From the NCBI GenBank assembly GCA_047495785.1, contig JBLDXI010000009.1:4526001-4590000 (forward strand): a stretch of 64,000 nucleotides of DNA. Reading direction: 5' to 3'. The notes below the pieces were generated by a model, which saw only the letters and a program-made list of their open reading frames with translations, was not told the DNA's origin and searched no databases. This stretch comes from Lepidodermella squamata (lineage: Eukaryota > Animalia > Gastrotricha). Both the position numbers and the translations under genes were made by a program. Shown piece by piece: positions 56,244-64,000 of the stretch (its first letter is position 1; each line of letters begins with the position of its first letter).

Positions 56244-58762
56244 GGTGGCGGCGCTGCGCCGCGCGCCTCGTCACGCCGGTTGAGCAGGAAAAGCGCGATG
56301 CGGCGTGGCAGTAGTGATCAGCGGTTTTTACCACGTGGCGGCACTGATTATTAGTGGGGGCGGAAATAATAACGAAACACGCCGAACGGTTACGCTTCGA
56401 TGATTGATTCAGTTGTTGTTCGATTTCGGTTTCACCAGGTAAAAGGGGTAATATCATCCTGTGTAAAAGCCTATCAAATATTTTCAATGAATATTTAAAA
56501 TTATTAAATTATTTAATAATCGGAAATTCCAGGTAAATTGGTTAATTTTTTTATAAAATATTTGCATGGCATTATTTTCCAGCGGAAAGGCTGGCAACCG
56601 ATCGGAATTTAAATCGGAAGGATAGGAAATTCGAACATAGCGCAGTCGCTTACTATACCGCGTAAATTGAACAATGGAGCGCGGTATTGTTCGGTCAATA
56701 TTATCATTTCGACAAAAATCATGCACATTTTTCAAGTTTTTTTCCTAAAAAGAGGATAGGCTGCGGTTTGAAATTATTCAAATTTTTCAGTAAAATTTAT
56801 ATTAGCATTCTACAAAATTGTTGCCTCATTGAGACTTTTAACGTTTCGTAGGATTTATTCGGAAATTAATCCACATTTTTCGCCTTGAAATATAGTGAAG
56901 AAATAAATTCGAAAAATTTTAGATCGAATTCAGCTTTCCTCTCTCGATTGCTGTGTCCCTACTATGAGAAAGAGAAAAAAAATATTTGAAATTATTAGAA
57001 TTTTTCTAGGTAAGAGAAATAGTTAATTAAGCTCCGTTCATTATCTAGGCCTCTGCGGCTTAGTTTCAAGAAATTATTCAATAATTCCCAATGATCTTGC
57101 GATAATCGCGTTTCGAAGAGCAACGAAAGGTCACATTGCGGTAGAGCAGACAGTAATTAAGCAAAACTGCTCGAAAGGGGCAATTTATTGCTACGAGTGT
57201 GCGTGTGCGAGTGTTCGCCATTTTGCCCCGTGATGAGTGTAATTTTGAATACGGCCGCGCCTGCAATCAATGACCGAGCTCTAAATTGAACATCACGCGT
57301 GCTTATTGTAATGATGAGATGGAGCCTCCCTCGAATGAGCAGTGCGTATCTATATATTTAAGGCTAATAAATTTTTAACCGACCCGCGGCCTGTTTATTT
57401 TTACACGCGATGATGTCGCGGCTTAAAACAACAATACGACACGCCGAAATCACGGATAAAACAAACAATAATACAACTCTATTTTTAGCAGAAAATAAAA
57501 TTGCATAAAATTCATAGAAAAATTCAGTATAAATGCAGATCAAATTAATTATTAGGTGAAATCAATGAAAAAATCAGGCGAAAAAATTAAAATTTTACAT
57601 AAAGGTGTGAAATTGTGAAATCAAGCCGTAATAGAAGTAATTTTGTACAGACGGATCAAAAATAAATTTATGAATAAACATGATTTGTTTTCGAAATTAA
57701 ATTTTTCAACACCTATAAGGCCCTGTAGTTGTGAAGAAGTTTACAAGGGTTATTTTAGTAGAAAAGACGGCGTGTATTCTATGTGCTTTATTACGACGGC
57801 GCTAGATTCCGTCCGGCCTTGCTTCTGGACACCTTACTATAATAAAACCTTATTTGGCGACGAAAATTATAATGAAACGAGCAGCACGTGCCAGCAGGAT
57901 TACATGGCGATATTTCCTGTTCGCGAAATTTTTACGCGTAGTATAAAAAAATGGAAATCGAACCAAGGAAGTTCGTGCTTGTAAAACCCCTCCAGACGGC
58001 ATATAGGTATCATTTTCCATAATTTTCGCGACCACTTGGCTAGTAGTGAGGGGGCTAAAAGCGGAACGAAAAAATTAGAAGTTTTTTGGTGCAAAATGGA
58101 CGGTTCTACGACATTTGCGCAAAAAGAACTGAGCAAAACGACAAGTGAGCACGACAATTGATCAAACGACAACTGAGCAAAATAAATTTTTAAATTTAAA
58201 AGCGACAAGTGATCAAACGACAACTGAGCAAATTGTAAATTAAATAATTAGTTATTTATTTTTAAATTTAAAAGCGACATTTGATCAAACGACAACTGAG
58301 CAAAATTTAATAAAAATTATTTAATAAAATTTAAAAACATTAGGAATAATTTTTTATTTGCTAAATTAGTTATAATAATTATAATTTTTATGACGTTTTT
58401 ATAATTACTTTTGCCAGGTGTCACTAAAATTATGGCAATTAAATTGTTTTATTGCCATAATTTAAGCAATATTTAAGTAATATTTCTCCGTCATTTAAAC
58501 TAACCAATCGGTGAGTTCGTGCTACCGCGAAAGAAAGCTGATTGGCTAAACTCATGGAAGCAACGCATTCATTGGTTGTTTTCTGATTAAGTACTGATTA
58601 AGAGTTTAGTAGAAGTCACTCGTGCCTATAGCCTCGTTTTGTTTACTTTTGGTCTAATTAAAGGCTGTTAGCTGTAAGCTGTGGAATATTTATTCGAACT
58701 TTTTTACGATAGAAATAACGTATTACATACTTTTATTCAACCTTGAAATTATTTATTAATTA

Positions 58763-59382
58763 CCGTCAAACGGGGCGACTTTGCCAGTCGGGGTCACTTT
58801 GCCACGGAAAAATGGGGCGACTTTCGCATAGCCATATCTCAGAGGTATCAAGATAAAGGCCCCTTGAGTGGGGTACCGTTGGAAAGCCCAAGAAAAGACC
58901 AGCTGGAATTCCTTGAACATACTTCAGCCCTTCACAATACCTGGTGATTAAACACAGGTAAAGTTGAGCTAAAAAATAGAGTTTTCGGCAGAATTTAGAT
59001 GACTCTAAAGTCGACCAGGTGTGATCAAAAAGAAAAATTATTGTCATTATCGAGCAATCTCCGACACAAGCTATCCAGCGGTACCCCACTTGAGAGGTAT
59101 CTGCCTTTCCACCTGCGGTTGGAGTTAGGGCAAAGTCGCCCCATCTGCATCTAAACCGTCCGCGGGGTGACTTTGCCAGTATCAAACGTCAGTTTGTGAA
59201 TTGGATACTGTTCAAACAGCAACACAAGGTATATAATTAAATTCAGCATACTCAGGGCTTTCCGTTGACATCCTATTTCACATACATCATGCATGAGATA
59301 TGGACAGCGTGTGCGATCTAAACTCGATCGCAAAAACCTATGGCAATGTCGCCCCACTGGCTAAAGTCGCCCCATTTGACGG
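58763..59382. mobile_element. Nested 620-bp MITE (pogo/Tc1-type, TA TSD) inside the MULE
   Basis: ta|CCGTCAAACGGGGCGACTTTGCCAGT ... ACTGGCTAAAGTCGCCCCATTTGACGG|ta, with internal GGGG(C/T)GACTTT subrepeats. Confidence 0.85.
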
Positions 59383-59718
59383 TATGTATTAAACGCTTTT
59401 CAAGAGATTATTTACATTAATCAAGTCAAGCCAAAGACACATTAGCAAATTTCAATTTTCAATTACACTGAAGTATGTATGAAAATTCAAAAAATGTAAT
59501 TGTCTAAGAAAACGGGTTACCTGAAGGTAGAGAAAATTGTGAAAACACAACAAAGCGTAAAAACATGAACACAATTTTACGTGAAACTCAACAAGAAATT
59601 TTTTTGGGTGATGAAACCCATCAGTTTTAAAAAATATCGAATGCTAACGTAATGTAAGGCTATAAGTCAAACTGAAAACGTCGCAGCTTGCCCGAGGGGA
59701 CAAGGCTGTAGTTAGCTA

Positions 59719-62700
59719 CTATTGACGTCGGGGGCCAATAAACTCATCCTCGTCATCAGTTTGACCATCGATCTCGATGTCGCCCATGTCGTAACGGGGG
59801 CCGAGCCTCTCGAAGGCCGACGCAATAGATTGCAAGTAGTCGATATTGTAGTTGCGAGTTATCCCAGCCTGCTGGACGAGATTGAAGAGCTCTCGGTCGA
59901 GGCGCGCGTAATCTGCATTCTGGCTTCTAATCGCTTGCTGGCCTCGTTGGAGTCGATACACAAGACCTTCTGACCTTTCCAGTTGAAAGTTGAGCCTTGC
60001 CATGAAAGATATCAGTGGCAAATGGCAGCCAAAAGTTTGCCTCGAGCCGTGATGATAACTTAAGATGTAAGAAAATACATCTTCTATATTTTATAAAAGC
60101 GTTTATCCTGATACTCACCCTTCGAGCCCAGCGTCCGATCGAGGAAGGCCATTCCGGGTACGGTCGTGTTGCGACCACTCCCTCGGATGATACCGGGGGC
60201 GATGGTACTCACCGAAGTCATCATAATAGCCAATATAAATCCGCCGAAAATAAAAAAATAAATCTCTTAGCCTAGGGCACCGCAAGAAAACCGGGTGAAC
60301 TGCCCGAACCAATTGTACGAAAATGCTTCCAACTAAGTTATGTGGCACGAATGCGAGCGCAGCTAGCAGCCTAACCGCCTGTTGAATCGAAGCGTTTTGC
60401 AAATATTGCACCCATAAGTTCAGTTTTTTAACCTAAAATGCAAGGACCGTTAATTAGTTGATCGATAATAACCAAATAATTTATCTTTTTCAAATTAGAA
60501 ACCTAATTTAACAGTACGAGACTAACCCGTTTGAGTAAGCTCTGCATGAGATGGAAGAGGCAGCCTCCAAGCCTTGCTGATGGGTAAACTTCATGAAACG
60601 CCTGCCTCGCTGCTAGCTCGAAATCTGCCATGAAAGATTCCGGCTGGAAACCGGGGAAAAGGCGCCGAATTTCGCGAAACAGCCTCAAATAAGTTTGCGA
60701 TCTGCGGTCGGGCAGTAAACAGTAGAGAGCGGGCACTGCTTTGACCCGTCTTTCTCCGTTCTGATACGCTTCCACGAAAAAGTGAAGAGTGAAGAGCTGA
60801 TGAAAGCCCATGGGAGCGCTGGCAAAAGTGCCGTTTGCAGCCATGTGACGGTATCGCTGTAGCTGAGCGATTAGCCTTCTTGAACCCAAAATGACGATTC
60901 GCTCGGGATCCTCAATGCCAGAGTCAAACAAAGTGAAGTCATTCGAGTTGTTTTGACCACGATTTTCTAAAGAACCGCGTAGAGCTTCAGAACGATAACG
61001 CTGAACAGAGCGTTGCAAAGCCATCTCCGACGGCAAATAGTCTTGAATTTCTATCGGGGTATTACGAAGAGTAGAGGAAATAATAAAATTAGTTTGATCC
61101 AAAGTTGCGCTTTGCGATCTCAAGCGTAATTCATGTCGAACGGACTGAGCGAGCAGGGCGTTGCCAGTAGGCGCTACATGTGCATGAGGCTGACCTTGTT
61201 GACCCGGTAGAACCCGATAAGGATAATTGCAACTTGTTATAATTGCGCACTTGCAGCCTCTACGCTCATTACAGCGCCAAGAAAAATGCCCTTCAGCGGT
61301 CCTGCGAACGAATCTAAAACGCATACCTTCATATACTCGCAATGGCTGACCCCTCTGCGAGAATACAATATCCGGCATTGTATCACGGCTGTTATTCGAA
61401 GTCGGTCGGTGAGCGGAGGTTGGACGTGAAGGCGTATCAGTTCGCCTGGAAAAATCCGAATTAAACGAGGTTCGCTGGCCGAGGCTTGATCGATTACTAG
61501 GATCATTTTCTGACGGTAAAGGCCTTTGGGAAGACGACGTTGATAAAGGGCGCTGAATCTGGCTGGAGCTAACACGTGAGTCATATGCTGATGATGAGGG
61601 CCTTTGAGAAAACGAGGACATTGAACTAGACGAAGGACGCTGACTGAAACTGTAGCGAAGAAGCGAGTCACTTTCCGCGGTTATTGGCCTATGCGAGGAC
61701 GAAGAAGATAGAGGACGCTGACTGGAACCGGAGCGAAGAAGCGAGTCACTTCTTTGGGAAGACGTGGACGGCCGAAGGAGATTTTGAGGAGGTTGTTGAC
61801 CTTGATCAAATTCAAAAACATCTATGCTCGAATTGTAATGTTCGAGGAATGGGTTATCACCCAAATCATCAAATTCGGAACCAGGATCGCTGTCGTCAGT
61901 ATTATACTCCAGCGCAATGTCAAGAAGCCCTGTAGACGCTCGGCGATTGGTCAGTGGCCTTGGAAATATCTCCTCGCCACCAGCGGCTACGTCTAGCAGT
62001 CCTTCTTCAGGGTCTGGATTAGAAGCGGCTTCTGCATAGCGTTCGTCTTCGCGGCGGACCATCTGTGAAGCACTCGGTTCATTTACGTTAAAACGTGAGT
62101 TATCAGGATCAGAATCATTCGAGCGAGGTAAGCTACGTCTTAATGGACTTCTTGACCGATCGGTATTGTCCAGCTGTAAAACGGATGCTTCCGGGGATGG
62201 TATACTCGGTAGATCATCCATTTCACTATTTCCATCGTGAGTTACCGGAGGCTCCTGGAGTAAAACGGCCTGAACGTCATTCACGCGGCCTCGACCTCGA
62301 AATCCTCCACGACCGATTCCACGACTTCGTGATCCTCGCGGTCGACCCCTGCTACGCCCTCGAACTACAACATTAGCAGCTTCAGTAACAGCAACAGGGC
62401 TTCGAGACGGTCTCGATAATGCAGGGGCTCGACCACGATTGCGACCTGTCCCCCTCGGCCTGCCGCGACGACGAACTGCCGGGGCAACAACTAGCGACTG
62501 AGCAGGCAAAGGATCCTCTGGAGGAAAACCACCAGGCCTCATGAGACGTACCAGACGTACGTCTCATGCCAGGCCTTTGATCAGGTTGATCATCATCGTC
62601 ATCGTCGAAATATAAGCGAATCAATCTCGGGTTCGCATCGGATAAATCGTCTCGGCAAGATGGACAATTTTCCTGGTCTTTTGAGGAGAAAATTGAAAGG

Positions 62701-63221
62701 CTATTTCCTATTTCTCAATTTTAAATATAATAATCCTGGGCATCAGATTATGTGATATATTCTACATTGAGTTGGATAAGCCAATAAAGCCCACCCAATA
62801 TAATCTAAACTAATCTAAACCCTAAGATTCGTGTATGAACTCAAATTAGAATTTGTGCCATAAATTAAAAATTCGGAATCATTATGACTGGTGAGCTCAA
62901 TTTGTTCGCCAGACTGCTTAACTCTCAATTAAAAAAATTTCTAGATTTTTCAAGTTTTTCAAGAAGTTTTTGCGCGCTTTTCTAACTATTTTACAATAAT
63001 TCCTATTCCTTATTAGCTAGTACAAACCTTAAAACTACAGTTAAACCAAAATAGAAAGAATACGAACCTTCCAGCCATCTTTGAATACACGTTTCGCAAA
63101 ATACGTGGCCGCAGAGCGTTGCGGTCGGATTATTAACCCTTTCTTTACAGATAGGGCACCGGACTGCTGTGGCGACATTTAAGAACAAGAGACAAAGCAA
63201 AGCTACCACCAGTGGTCGCAT
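59719..63221 (-). pseudogene. RING-finger + AT-hook-like + FLYWCH-like + MULE transposase fusion gene, frameshifted
   Basis: Exons 63221-63068, 62677-60527, 60432-60119, 60058-59719. RING: CPIC..CGHVFC..C...W.E|DQENCPSCR. Finger: SQRG..L.VYEG.RF...WRC....C....H.H. MULE: (N)GTF..P..F.QLFTLH, YCLLP...Q.Y, FMADFELA, GCLFHL, LAALAFVP, YFRRIYIG, R...LEG|YH. A 37-bp insertion (62540-62576) breaks the frame. Confidence 0.85.
62540..62568. mobile_element. 29-bp palindromic insertion with 12-bp TIRs and 8-bp TSD (hAT-like remnant)
   Basis: CCAGGCCT|CATGAGACGTAC-CAGAC-GTACGTCTCATG|CCAGGCCT. Confidence 0.75.
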
Positions 63222-63830
63222 TGCGATATCAATTAACAGTAATGAAAAGTTGAGTGGATAATTTGTTCACGAATTAATTTTCAAAAATTTCAAAAAGTGG
63301 GAGAGATGGAATTTTGCGTTCGGAGCGGCGCCCATTTTCTCGAACTTTCTCAAATTGTCACTTGGCGTCATGTGGCTATATACGTCATGTTTATGACGTC
63401 TCGCGCCAGCGAGGTTTCGAGAAGGCAATTCCAAAGCGATAATTTTACTGAGTCATTTGCTACTTGAACCTTTAGATTGGCATTCTAATTTCTCCTTTGC
63501 CAACGCAAAAGCAAATGTAACCAATTGGTAACCATTGAATATGTTGCTTAGCCAATCCGCTTTCTTTCGCGGTAGCACCAATACACCGATTGGCCAGTTT
63601 ATACGACGAACAATAAGTATTACAGAAATATTAATTGAATAGCAATATACCGACAAAATAATAACATAATTTAAATGTCATAATTTTGTTAAGACCTGGT
63701 AAGACTAATTATAAGAACTTCATAAAAATTATAATTATTATAACTAATTTAGCAAATAAAAAATTATTTCTAATTTTTTTTAATTTTATTAAATAATTTT
63801 TATTAAATTTTGCTCAGTTGTCGTTTGATC

Positions 63831-64000
63831 CGTGGGGCGTCAACTCATCCGCGGTCAACTCGTCCGCGACAACTCATCCGCGACAACTCGTCCAGCGACA
63901 ACTCATCCGAAATTAAATAAATATTTAAATAATTATTTTTAGTGACAACTCATCCGGTGACAACTGGCCCGGCCCGGCCGACGTGTCGCGGATGAGTTGT
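63831..64000. mobile_element. Second non-autonomous element with tandem CAACTC(A/G)TCC subrepeats inserted in the right MULE TIR; runs off the window
   Basis: GGGGCGTCAACTCATCCGCGGTCAACTCGTCCGCGACAACTCATCCGCGAC...; an inverted copy (GTCGCGGATGAGTTGT) begins at ~63985. Confidence 0.7.

What the first reader, a model, noticed from the sequence alone, without database searches (positions are those of the whole stretch)
59719..63221. Mutator transposase fused in frame to a signal-peptide-like leader and a C3HC4 RING finger
Seen: inside the MULE TIRs, exon 63221-63068 encodes MRPLVVALLCLLFLNVATA (hydrophobic, AxA cleavage-like) followed by most of a RING finger. It splices in phase 1 to an exon that completes the RING (CPSCR). 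After removing one 37-bp insertion, the frame continues through RGRPRG AT-hook-like motifs, an acidic/Ser-rich linker, a FLYWCH-like finger and the full MULE core (2922 nt, ~973 aa). Established: MULEs capture host sequences and some carry Ulp1 protease or zinc-finger extras; C3HC4 RINGs are usually E3 ligases. Inference: this is a MULE family whose transposase carries its own E3 ligase, possibly for anti-silencing or self-turnover. A secretion-like leader on a nuclear enzyme is paradoxical and could mean capture of a secreted RING gene's first exon, or ER targeting/export of the protein. I do not know of this architecture being described, but cannot search.
Basis: partly seen in the sequence, partly recalled or inferred. 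Interest (0 to 1): 0.8.

Follow-up and report, generated by a model that had tools for sequence, protein, structure and literature searches.

The report
Mutator transposase with leader and RING finger
A dead copy of a cut-and-paste (Mutator-type) jumping gene shows that a whole group of such elements starts its transposase with an export-signal-like greasy leader and a RING finger of the ubiquitin-ligase type, a layout reported for other transposon groups (RAG1, Chapaev) but not for animal Mutator elements in the papers I could search.

Summary
On the minus strand, four GT..AG exons (63221-63068, 62677-60527, 60432-60119, 60058-59719) encode a signal-peptide-like leader, a C3HC4 RING split by intron 1, AT-hook-like motifs, a Ser/acidic linker, FLYWCH and the MULE DDE core. 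They add up to 2922 nt once a 37-bp insert is discounted.

The element is larger than reported: about 58103-64555, running past the window end. It has a 9-bp target duplication and long TIRs.

This copy is dead. The insert is a MITE footprint that frameshifts the gene, the first catalytic Asp is Asn, and MITEs are nested in it. It is single-copy.

The architecture is not a one-off capture. At least six further RING-first loci in the same genome (C23, C29 with its deleted copy on C3, C32 twice, C38, C43) and two environmental contig families share it. Five N-termini carry a leader and three lack one. In one relative, leader, RING and AT-hooks lie in one uninterrupted ORF.

E3 activity, splicing and the leader's role are untested.

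In the papers I searched, RING fingers in transposons are reported for Chapaev/RAG1, one oomycete MuDR, and a diatom MULE with a separate UBR-type ligase ORF.

The scan met this leader-RING exon before on other DNA of this genome (s1-410320).

The parts
58094..58102 (.). Left copy of the candidate 9-bp target-site duplication AAATGGACG. The right copy is at 64556-64564, outside the window.
   Evidence: Read from L026 (window coordinate = L026 position + 55999). The same 9-mer directly flanks both ends.
58103..58549 (+). Left terminal inverted repeat. It consists of three tandem sub-repeat units of about 50-70 bp (core CGACAACTGAGC) followed by an inner unique part.
   Evidence: arm pairs 58283-58453/63660-63830 (171 nt, 91%) and 58484-58549/63548-63613 (66 nt, 85%); the outer 141 nt are 98% complementary to L026 8367-8507.
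58752..59393 (.). Probable nested MITE in the 3' non-coding part of the element.
   Evidence: pair I3: 53-nt arms, 75% complementary, with GGGGCGACTTTGCC sub-repeats. Not followed up further.
59719..60058 (-). Exon 4, the C-terminal region with the stop codon.
   Evidence: It has 52% identity to the matching part of L045.
60119..60432 (-). Exon 3, the rest of the DDE domain. The catalytic Glu codon lies at 60123-60121, in the motif R-S-D-A-G-L-E-G.
   Evidence: It has 37-58% identity to relatives. In one search the motif R-T-N-N-x-x-E-G/A-x-H of longer homologues marks the place; exon 3 itself was not in that alignment.
60527..62677 (-). Exon 2: the end of the RING, the post-RING motif, AT-hooks, the Ser/acidic linker, FLYWCH and most of the MULE core. 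Its frame is broken by the 37-bp insert.
62532..62568 (.). The 37-bp frameshifting insert: fused termini of a MITE family plus one copy of its 8-bp target duplication AGGCCTGG. Its last three bases supply the ATG of the long ORF.
   Evidence: for the sequence. In one search the terminal 12-mer occurs 233 times in the genome against 4 for the control, often in +/- pairs 375-405 bp apart.
62318..62473 (-). Two AT-hook-like motifs with a G-R-P core in Arg-rich context.
   Evidence: translation. The same motifs follow the RING in all relatives. Pfam does not score them.
61226..61366 (-). FLYWCH zinc finger, the DNA-binding domain.
   Evidence: PF04500, E 1.7e-6, 28.5 bits against a cut-off of 23.6.
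60542..60748 (-). Pfam MULE match. The first catalytic position lies just upstream at 60835-60833 and reads AAC (Asn, not Asp). The second Asp is at 60625-60623.
   Evidence: PF10551, 34.3 bits against 27.6, profile positions 26-98 only; the motif A-A-D-G-T-F of relatives reads A-A-N-G-T-F here. The D1-D2 spacing of 70 compares with 69 in Muta1.
63068..63221 (-). Exon 1: the leader (63221-63165, 19 residues) and RING ligands 1-6.
62652..62677 (-). Start of exon 2, which completes the RING (C-P-S-C followed by Arg).
   Evidence: alignment A2.
63548..63830 (-). Inner part of the right TIR. The outer sub-repeat part lies at 64366-64555, beyond the window.
63831..64000 (.). Foldback-type MITE (535 bp, running to 64365) inserted into the right TIR, with the 9-bp duplication GATCAAACG.

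Best explanation
Shown: the window holds one defective copy of an autonomous Mutator-like (Phantom/Muta-type, FLYWCH-bearing) DNA transposon of about 6.45 kb. Its spliced transposase gene begins with a signal-peptide-like hydrophobic leader and a canonical C3HC4 RING. It then continues in frame through AT-hooks, a disordered linker, FLYWCH and the DDE core.

Shown: this RING-first layout is the ancestral gene plan of a clade of such elements in this invertebrate and in at least one other, unidentified organism. It is not a captured host fragment.

Inferred: the RING works in cis as an E2-recruiting ubiquitin ligase and/or dimerisation module of the transposase. It would modify the transposase itself, chromatin or host factors at the transposition site, as the RING of RAG1 does.

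Inferred: the leader is a selected feature that brings the nascent protein to the ER membrane. What follows is unknown.

Shown: this copy cannot work as such. A MITE footprint frameshifts the gene between the RING and the AT-hooks. The first catalytic Asp is Asn. Two MITEs are nested in it, one of them in a TIR.
For: Gene model and domains.

Element limits, 9-bp duplication and TIRs.

Single copy.

Recurrence of RING then AT-hooks then FLYWCH then MULE, inside TIRs where both ends were read:
- C23 (509-nt TIRs, 98% identical), C29, and its 99.4% identical deleted copy on C3 with different flanks; C32:2143362 also sits inside TIRs.
- C32:32311 and C38.
- C43, a deleted derivative that keeps leader plus RING.
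- Environmental contig L046: RING plus AT-hooks in one ORF, directly upstream of the MULE ORF.
- Environmental contigs L063/L064: leader, RING and AT-hooks in one 210-residue ORF, followed by FLYWCH and MULE.

The six RING ligands that all aligned rows cover are invariant, together with the Ile after the first Cys.

The model of the L063 N-terminus matches RNF4, TRIM and TRAF6 RINGs at about 2 Å over 50-58 residues.

Five leaders have a basic start and a best 10-residue hydropathy of 2.6-3.45. Three leaderless relatives score 0.8-1.5.

In the tree, the window groups with P0001 (support 94/92), and the two leaderless ones form their own pair (92/91) among leader-bearing lineages.

The 37-bp insert is a MITE footprint.

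Asp to Asn. In Muta1, changing D214 to Ala abolished transposition (PMC5225508).
Against: There is no transcript evidence for any splice junction.

No E3 assay was done. A RING can serve as a structural or dimerisation module only.

A cleaved signal peptide would put an AT-hook/FLYWCH DNA-binding enzyme into the ER lumen, which makes no obvious sense. Three lineages do without the leader.

In L046 the last Cys pair of the RING is atypical.

In several relatives (C23, L046, L063) the RING ORF and the next ORF are separated by a stop or a frame change. I assume these are short introns or decay.

The tree rests on only 125 residues. It does not resolve whether the two RING groups (window/C23 type and C29/C32 type) are sisters.

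Among the 150 best library representatives, none of the 10 with an N-terminal extension has a RING in the same called protein.
Confidence: 0.8

Rival explanations
1. The RING serves only as a zinc-dependent dimerisation or protein-contact module of the transposase, like the zinc-binding dimerisation region of RAG1. It has no ligase activity. In elements where the hydrophobic N-terminus abuts the RING, that N-terminus is a flanking helix of a TRIM/BRCA1-style helical bundle rather than a targeting signal.
For: The model of L063 places a helix (residues 3-12) before the RING and another (69-84) after it. Foldseek finds long alignments to the TRIM69, BRCA1 and TRIM21 RING-plus-helix dimers and to the RAG1 dimerisation domain. 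TRIM5 aligns to window residues 12-47, so the alignment includes part of the leader.
Against: The leaders are uninterrupted hydrophobic runs of 10-14 residues and are not amphipathic. In C29 and C43 a Pro/Gln/acidic spacer of about 35-40 residues separates leader and RING, which does not fit a packed flanking helix. The residues usually needed for E2 contact are kept: Ile after Cys1, Trp in the helix, Pro after Cys7 and Arg after Cys8. The long Foldseek alignments have rmsd of 7-13 Å.
Confidence: 0.2
2. Exon 1 is not part of the transposase gene. It would be a captured host fragment (Pack-MULE style) or a small separate gene that happens to lie upstream in the element.
For: MULEs are known to capture host fragments (PMC6446971). 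This copy shows no continuous ORF from the RING to the transposase. Host RINGs reach 44-55% identity over about 30 residues.
Against: Position, orientation and order are the same in nine or more loci of lineages that are only 30-50% identical. RING and AT-hooks share one ORF in L046, L063 and C38. The split RING is completed exactly, in phase, by exon 2. The frame break is a secondary MITE footprint. The similarity to host RINGs is limited to the generic RING core.
Confidence: 0.05
3. The locus is a domesticated or repressor-type derivative. A catalytically dead protein (Asn at the first catalytic position) would be translated from the ATG that the footprint supplies. It would lack the RING, keep AT-hooks and FLYWCH, and bind element ends to damp transposition.
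For: Apart from the 37-bp insert, the 2.9-kb reading frame has no stop, although the inner TIR arms are only 85-91% alike. Asn at the first catalytic position recurs in three other families: L063, L004, and L003/L006. The long ORF has its own ATG.
Against: The locus keeps TIRs and a target duplication, and carries nested MITEs. There is no evidence for a promoter or transcript for the internal ATG. No orthologue could be examined in another genome. The TIR arms need not have been identical at insertion, so the age argument is weak.
Confidence: 0.07

Closest known systems
Phantom / Muta-type animal MULEs (e.g. Muta1 of Aedes aegypti; PMC5225508, PMC6446971)
   Same: Both have an N-terminal FLYWCH finger and a DDE core, with a D1-D2 spacing of 70 here against 69 in Muta1. 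Both make 8-9-bp target duplications. Both have long TIRs built of subterminal tandem repeats and a spliced transposase gene.
   Different: Muta transposases are 416-554 residues long and start with FLYWCH. Here about 390 extra residues precede it: leader, RING, AT-hooks and a Ser/acidic linker. I did not place the element in a tree with named Phantom sequences.
RAG1 and the RING-bearing Chapaev transposases (PMC4411706)
   Same: Both carry a C3HC4 RING N-terminal to a DDE cut-and-paste catalytic core in one protein. The RAG1 RING is a documented E3 that ubiquitylates itself (citations within PMC4411706). The RAG1 RING is among the sequence and fold matches.
   Different: The transposase superfamily differs (Transib/Chapaev versus Mutator). 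There is no Chapa domain. The RING sits at the very N-terminus behind a hydrophobic leader. The 2015 paper stated that RING fingers are encoded by no other known transposable elements.
MuDR-37_PI of Phytophthora infestans (C3HC4 noted in Table 1 of PMC6446971) and the diatom MULE with a UBR-type E3 ORF (bioRxiv 10.1101/2023.01.02.522487)
   Same: All are Mutator-superfamily elements that carry a ubiquitin-ligase-type zinc finger.
   Different: The Phytophthora case belongs to the SWIM-type MuDR group and appears only as a table entry. The diatom element encodes the ligase as a separate ORF of a different (UBR) type. Neither has a FLYWCH finger, AT-hooks or a leader.
MULEs that carry ubiquitin-system proteases (the OTU domain of MuDR-6_HM in PMC6446971; Ulp1-bearing plant MULEs, from my own knowledge)
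   Same: In both, a Mutator element carries an enzyme domain of the ubiquitin/SUMO system besides the transposase.
   Different: Those are proteases that remove the modifier. This one is a ligase-type domain that would add it, and it is fused at the N-terminus.
Herpesvirus ICP0-type RING proteins (EHV-1 RING, PDB 1chc)
   Same: Both are RING-HC domains encoded by a genetic parasite. 1chc is among the best sequence matches to exon 1 (E 1.5e-6).
   Different: ICP0 is not fused to a recombinase. The similarity is at the level of the generic RING only.
NFE2L1 / SKN-1A, DNA-binding proteins with an N-terminal ER anchor (from my own knowledge, not tested here)
   Same: Both are nuclear DNA-binding proteins that start with an ER-targeting hydrophobic segment. 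NFE2L1 and SKN-1A are released through the ER-associated degradation pathway, which is driven by RING ligases.
   Different: There is no sequence relationship. The parallel is purely mechanistic and offered as a lead.

Membership tests
Mutator-like element (MULE) superfamily | Transposase matches the MULE DDE domain model above the curated threshold | tested here: met
   PF10551 scores 34.3 bits against a cut-off of 27.6. The library search found 4757 homologues at E<=1e-3, and the best are FLYWCH+MULE proteins.
Mutator-like element (MULE) superfamily | Target-site duplication of 8-11 bp (typically 9 bp) and long terminal inverted repeats | tested here: met
   The 9-mer AAATGGACG flanks both ends. 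The TIRs are about 450 bp with arms 85-98% identical. The outermost 6-7 nt of the two ends are not complementary.
Mutator-like element (MULE) superfamily | Intact DDE catalytic triad | tested here: not met
   This copy reads Asn-Asp-Glu (AAC at 60835-60833). In alignment A3, 8 of 10 rows have Asp there (codons). This marks a defective member; it does not argue against membership.
Phantom/Muta group of animal MULEs | FLYWCH-type finger N-terminal to the DDE core | tested here: met
   PF04500 scores 28.5 bits against 23.6, at residues 393-439 of the long ORF.
Phantom/Muta group of animal MULEs | Phylogenetic grouping with named Phantom/Muta reference transposases | not tested
   No named reference sequences were available to the tools. 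The tree holds only unnamed homologues.
RING-HC (C3HC4) E3 ligase domain | Eight zinc ligands C-x2-C-x(9-39)-C-x-H-x2-C-x2-C-x(4-48)-C-x2-C | tested here: met
   Six ligands lie in exon 1 and two at the start of exon 2, with spacings of 11 and 11. The six ligands covered by all rows are invariant. Pfam RING models score above their cut-offs in the window and in five relatives.
RING-HC (C3HC4) E3 ligase domain | Cross-brace RING fold | tested here: met
   Tested on the relative L063 only, because the window's RING is split by an intron and was not joined. The AlphaFold model (pLDDT 81-88 over the core) matches RNF4, TRIM31/32 and TRAF6 RINGs at 1.3-2.9 Å over 50-60 columns with probability 1.00. 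E-values are only 1.6e-3 to 6e-2 because the domain is small.
RING-HC (C3HC4) E3 ligase domain | E2-dependent ubiquitin transfer | not testable with these tools
   This needs a biochemical assay. By sequence, the usual E2-contact residues are present: Ile after Cys1, Trp in the helix, Pro after Cys7 and Arg after Cys8.
Cleavable ER signal peptide | Basic n-region, hydrophobic h-region of 7-15 residues, and small residues at -3/-1 | tested here: met
   All five leaders start with M plus R/K/H-K and have hydrophobic runs of 10-14 residues, with a best 10-residue hydropathy of 2.6-3.45. The window (A-T-A), L063 (T-T-A), C43 (I-Q-A) and C29 (G-N-C) have candidate cleavage sites; none was identified in the C32:32311 leader. 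This check is descriptive only.
Cleavable ER signal peptide | Positive call by a trained predictor, and actual translocation or cleavage | not testable with these tools
   No SignalP, Phobius or DeepTMHMM was available, and no experiment was possible.
Pack-MULE (captured host fragment) | Non-autonomous element whose cargo has a clear host donor gene | tested here: not met
   The element encodes its own transposase. The best host RINGs (PEX10-like, RNF5/185-like) reach 44-55% identity over about 30 residues only. The RING is conserved across divergent element lineages.
Domesticated MULE transposase gene | Loss of TIRs and target duplication, with an intact conserved ORF | tested here: not met
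   TIRs and the duplication are present. The ORF is frameshifted and the element carries nested MITEs.

The most novel reading that the evidence does not exclude
The leader is a working ER signal or signal-anchor that has been kept since the origin of this RING-MULE clade. The transposase would first be delivered to the ER membrane or lumen. It would reach the nucleus only after RING-dependent handling by the ER-associated degradation machinery, in the manner of NFE2L1/SKN-1A, or it would be exported from the cell. Transposition would then be coupled to proteostasis stress or to passage between cells. That would be a control principle not described for any DNA transposon.
Probability: 0.15. 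Interest if true: 0.85.

Novelty: new variant of a known kind. Interest (0 to 1): 0.6.

Why it matters
RAG1, the recombinase behind vertebrate adaptive immunity, is the textbook case of a DDE transposase fused to a RING ubiquitin ligase. A 2015 analysis stated that RING fingers occur in no transposons other than its Chapaev/Transib kin.

A second, independent RING-transposase fusion, in the unrelated Mutator superfamily of a small invertebrate, has been kept through divergence down to 30-45% identity. This suggests that bringing a ubiquitin ligase to the transposition complex pays off repeatedly. It also offers a simpler system for asking what such a RING does: self-turnover, chromatin marking or attack on host silencing factors.

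The conserved export-signal-like leader on a DNA-binding nuclear enzyme is unexplained. It can be tested directly with reporter fusions.

Tried and rejected
- Word-based protein searches. The FLYWCH-MULE part found nothing. The C29 leader-RING ORF found nothing. The L046 RING ORF found only itself.

- Library search. The 150 best representatives are mostly FLYWCH-MULE proteins of about 460 residues. The ten with N-terminal extensions have no RING. Spliced upstream exons are not captured by ORF-style gene calls, so I had to read the contigs themselves.

- The closest relative, L045 (53% identity), is 5'-truncated and carries a nested Tc1-like element, so it says nothing about the RING.

- L050, L051, L052 and L065 are too short upstream to judge. 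L066 has about 4 kb of upstream sequence and no RING, so it belongs with the negatives.

- Host donor for the RING. The apparent 'leader plus RING' hits in tandem host gene clusters are TRIM-like genes whose 'leader' is the translated polypyrimidine tract of an intron acceptor. Rejected.

- PDB sequence searches give only generic RING matches and no specific donor family.

- A 16-mer of the 37-bp insert matched only locally. The 12-mer terminus was needed to reveal the MITE family.

- The 37 bases cannot be a short intron: there is no GT..AG pair of suitable length and phase.

RING absence in them is therefore judged from 1.5-kb flanks only.

- The ESM Atlas gave only generic RING and FLYWCH/MULE clusters.

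All searches used single exons or single ORFs by reference.
Full report
OBSERVATION

Exon 1 (63221-63068) starts at the only in-frame ATG after a stop. It encodes M-R-P, an 11-residue hydrophobic run and N-V-A-T-A. Next come C-P-I-C, an 11-residue spacer, C-G-H, and two more Cys in C-x2-C spacing. Pfam calls a RING (zf-C3HC4_2, E 1.6e-11) that covers profile positions 1-32 of 40, so the domain is cut off at the exon end.

A GT..AG intron of 390 nt follows. In phase 1, exon 2 (from 62677) supplies D-Q-E-N-C-P-S-C-R, the missing last ligand pair at the right spacing.

The RING frame then meets a 37-bp insert: a 29-bp palindrome plus the second copy of an 8-bp direct repeat, AGGCCTGG. Beyond the insert, the long ORF 62542-60527 is in the frame that would continue the RING frame if the 37 bases were absent. 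It holds two AT-hook-like G-R-P motifs, a Ser-rich and acidic linker, FLYWCH and the MULE domain.

Introns of 94 and 60 nt lead to exons 3 and 4. The exon lengths give 2922 nt, as reported. I did not build or search the joined protein. Every search used single exons or ORFs by reference.

THE ELEMENT

The element is bigger than the finding's coordinates. Using the genome piece L026 (window coordinate = L026 position + 55999), the TIRs consist of an outer block of tandem 50-70-bp units (core CGACAACTGAGC; 141 nt, 98% complementary) and an inner part (171 nt at 91%, 66 nt at 85%).

The same 9-mer, AAATGGACG, flanks both ends. The element therefore spans about 58103-64555, which is 555 bp beyond the window.

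The right TIR is split by a 535-bp foldback MITE with its own 9-bp duplication. A second probable MITE sits at 58752-59393.

The family is effectively single-copy. The next best transposase match in the 121-Mb assembly is 43% identical. The TIR finds only its own two arms plus short fragments of about 80% identity at two other sites.

WHY THIS COPY IS DEAD

- The 12-nt terminus of the 37-bp palindrome occurs 233 times in the genome against 4 for the control, often as +/- pairs 375-405 bp apart. The insert is therefore the fused ends of a MITE plus its 8-bp target duplication, that is, an excision footprint or minimal derivative. This shows that the frame break is secondary. The footprint also supplies the ATG of the long ORF.
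- In the motif A-A-D-G-T-F, which holds the first catalytic Asp, the window reads A-A-N-G-T-F (codon AAC, 60835-60833). The spacing to the second Asp is 70, against 69 between D214 and D283 of Muta1, where changing D214 to Ala abolished transposition (PMC5225508).

IS THE RING PART OF THE TRANSPOSASE?

Searching the genome with exon 1 placed RING hits just upstream of MULE hits, on the same strand, at several other sites. Reading those loci gave the following.

- C23: an element with 509-nt TIRs, 98% identical. The gene starts M-S-D-L-S-F-T-C-P-I-C about 55 bp after a TATA-like box. AT-hooks, FLYWCH and MULE follow.
- C29: a 4.5-kb element whose first exon holds a leader, a spacer of about 40 residues and a complete RING. 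AT-hooks, FLYWCH and MULE follow, and Asp is present at the first catalytic position.
- C3: a 99.4% identical copy of the C29 element with a 1.2-kb internal deletion and different flanks, so that family moved recently.
- C32:2143362: a RING exon that abuts the TIR; its 5' part is missing.
- C43: leader plus RING without a transposase, that is, a deleted derivative.
- C32:32311: leader plus RING.
- C38: M-A-N-C-A-D-C, then RING and AT-hooks in one 218-residue frame, followed by FLYWCH.

After the RING, several members share the motif basic-hydrophobic-hydrophobic-basic-Leu-aromatic followed by acidic residues. In the C29 and C32 elements this motif lies across the exon boundary.

EVIDENCE FROM OUTSIDE THE GENOME

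The full library search found 4757 homologues but only five at E<=1e-30, all ORF-called pieces on environmental contigs.

- L046: a 193-residue ORF starts M-F-C-S-I-C. It carries a RING (57% identical to exon 1 over 30 residues) and AT-hooks, and ends 18 nt before the FLYWCH-MULE ORF.
- L063/L064, from two samples: one 210-residue ORF encodes a 17-residue leader ending T-T-A, then V-C-P-I-C, the RING and a run of AT-hooks. FLYWCH and MULE follow.

These contigs share no DNA-level similarity with this genome, and their element proteins are only 37-53% identical to it. They therefore come from another organism, whose identity I could not establish.

Other FLYWCH-MULE families of this genome start with a C2H2 finger or with AT-hooks only, as far as the 1.5-kb flanks show. 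A tree of 125 core residues puts the window next to P0001 (support 94/92) within a weakly supported group that also holds P0004 and the C23/P0002 pair (84/79). C29 and C32 pair separately (99/98). The two leaderless members, C23 and P0002, form one pair among leader-bearing lineages. One loss of an ancestral leader is the most economical reading, but the tree is short and weakly resolved.

THE RING

The six ligands covered by all seven aligned rows are invariant, as is the Ile after the first Cys. Trp in the helix, Pro after Cys7 and Arg after Cys8 are also kept in the window.

Sequence matches are to active RING-HC ligases in general: TRIM5, BRCA1, EHV-1 ICP0-type, RNF4, PEX10, RNF125, and also RAG1. 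No specific donor family stands out.

A model of the L063 N-terminus (mean pLDDT 73; 81-88 over the core) superposes on RNF4, TRIM and TRAF6 RINGs at about 2 Å.

THE LEADER

Five N-termini begin with M plus a basic residue and a hydrophobic run of 10-14 residues. These are the window, L063, C29, C43 and C32:32311. In four of them small residues follow at the -3/-1 positions; I did not identify such a site in the C32:32311 leader. Their best 10-residue hydropathy is 2.6-3.45, against 0.8-1.5 in the three leaderless relatives.

The leaders share no sequence beyond this character, which argues that the property itself is selected. In C29 and C43 the segment after the leader is acidic, which by the positive-inside rule (established knowledge) favours translocation of what follows.

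I could not run a signal-peptide predictor. How an AT-hook/FLYWCH enzyme would profit from ER targeting is open.

MECHANISM

Shown:
- The gene plan, its conservation, and the defects of this copy.

Inferred:
- The RING recruits an E2 to the transposase, as in RAG1, whose RING is an E3 that ubiquitylates itself (citations within PMC4411706). Likely substrates are the transposase itself, nearby chromatin or host factors. I put about 0.5 on real ligase activity and about 0.2 on a purely structural or dimerising role.
- For the leader, I put about 0.5 on ER or membrane targeting of some kind, about 0.2 on a non-secretory structural role, and the rest on unknown or none.

COMPARISON WITH THE LITERATURE

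- Kapitonov and Koonin (PMC4411706) found RING fingers only in two Chapaev subgroups and RAG1, and stated that no other known transposable elements encode them.
- The MULE survey of Dupeyron et al. (PMC6446971) lists a C3HC4 finger for one Phytophthora MuDR (37_Pi). For the animal Phantom group it lists FLYWCH, SWIM or none.
- A diatom MULE carries a separate ORF for a UBR-type ligase (bioRxiv 10.1101/2023.01.02.522487).
- I found no description of a leader-RING-AT-hook-FLYWCH-MULE transposase. Repbase and Dfam could not be searched.

EARLIER NOTES OF THIS SCAN

Note s1-410320 reached the same reading from a deleted element that keeps the leader-RING exon, and it mentions a second animal. My results agree and add intact relatives.

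Another note suggests the genome is the gastrotrich Lepidodermella squamata. I did not check this.

VERDICT

This is a new variant of a known kind: a MULE with an added N-terminal RING and leader, convergent with RAG1/Chapaev. The window holds a broken example of it.

Noticed in passing
window 62532-62568; also G000:C13:1465020-1465057: A MITE family with termini CATGAGACGTAC and 8-bp target duplications. The terminus occurs 233 times in the genome, often as inverted pairs 375-405 bp apart. It leaves tiny 'both ends fused' footprints. The footprint in the window supplies the ATG of the long transposase ORF.
   Followed up: partly
window 60833-60835; L063, L004 (C32:2189618), L003/L006 (C74, C13): Asn replaces the first catalytic Asp of the DDE triad in four separate FLYWCH-MULE families (codons AAC or AAT against GAT in relatives), and none is in a CpG context. 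Two copies on different contigs share it. This could be chance decay, or a recurrent catalytically dead and possibly repressor-like form.
   Followed up: partly
window 63831-64000, continuing to 64365 (L026 7832-8366): A 535-bp foldback MITE sits inside the right TIR, flanked by the 9-bp duplication GATCAAACG. It is built of GACAACTCATCCG repeats that resemble the host element's own sub-repeat.
   Followed up: partly
window 58135-58321; L023 6480-6700; L027 6540-7047: The subterminal repeats of divergent RING-MULE elements share a core: CGACAACTGAGC in C9, GACAACCGAGAC or CGACAACTGAGAC in C32, and GGACAATTAAGAC in C23. This core is a candidate transposase (FLYWCH) binding site that is conserved although the transposases are only 30-45% identical.
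   Followed up: no
L024 (G000:C3:371113-374393) versus L025 (G000:C29:3548223-3552720): The C3 element is a 99.4% identical copy of the C29 RING-MULE with a 1.2-kb internal deletion (AT-hook to FLYWCH region) and different flanks. That family has therefore transposed recently.
   Followed up: partly
L045 3148-4488: The closest environmental relative of the window's transposase carries a nested Tc1/mariner-like element. It has perfect 28-nt TIRs and an ORF with a CENP-B-type helix-turn-helix, and it sits exactly where the exon 2/exon 3 intron lies.
   Followed up: no
L010 (G000:C54:351628-355059) and L007 (G000:C7:2402172-2405552): Other FLYWCH-MULE families of the same genome have different N-terminal add-ons: a C2H2 finger (C54 and C7:905546) or AT-hooks alone (C7:2403672). 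The N-terminus of these transposases seems to be a hot spot for domain gain.
   Followed up: no
window 58752-59393: A probable nested MITE of about 640 bp (53-nt arms, 75% complementary, GGGGCGACTTTGCC repeats) lies in the 3' non-coding part of the element.
   Followed up: no
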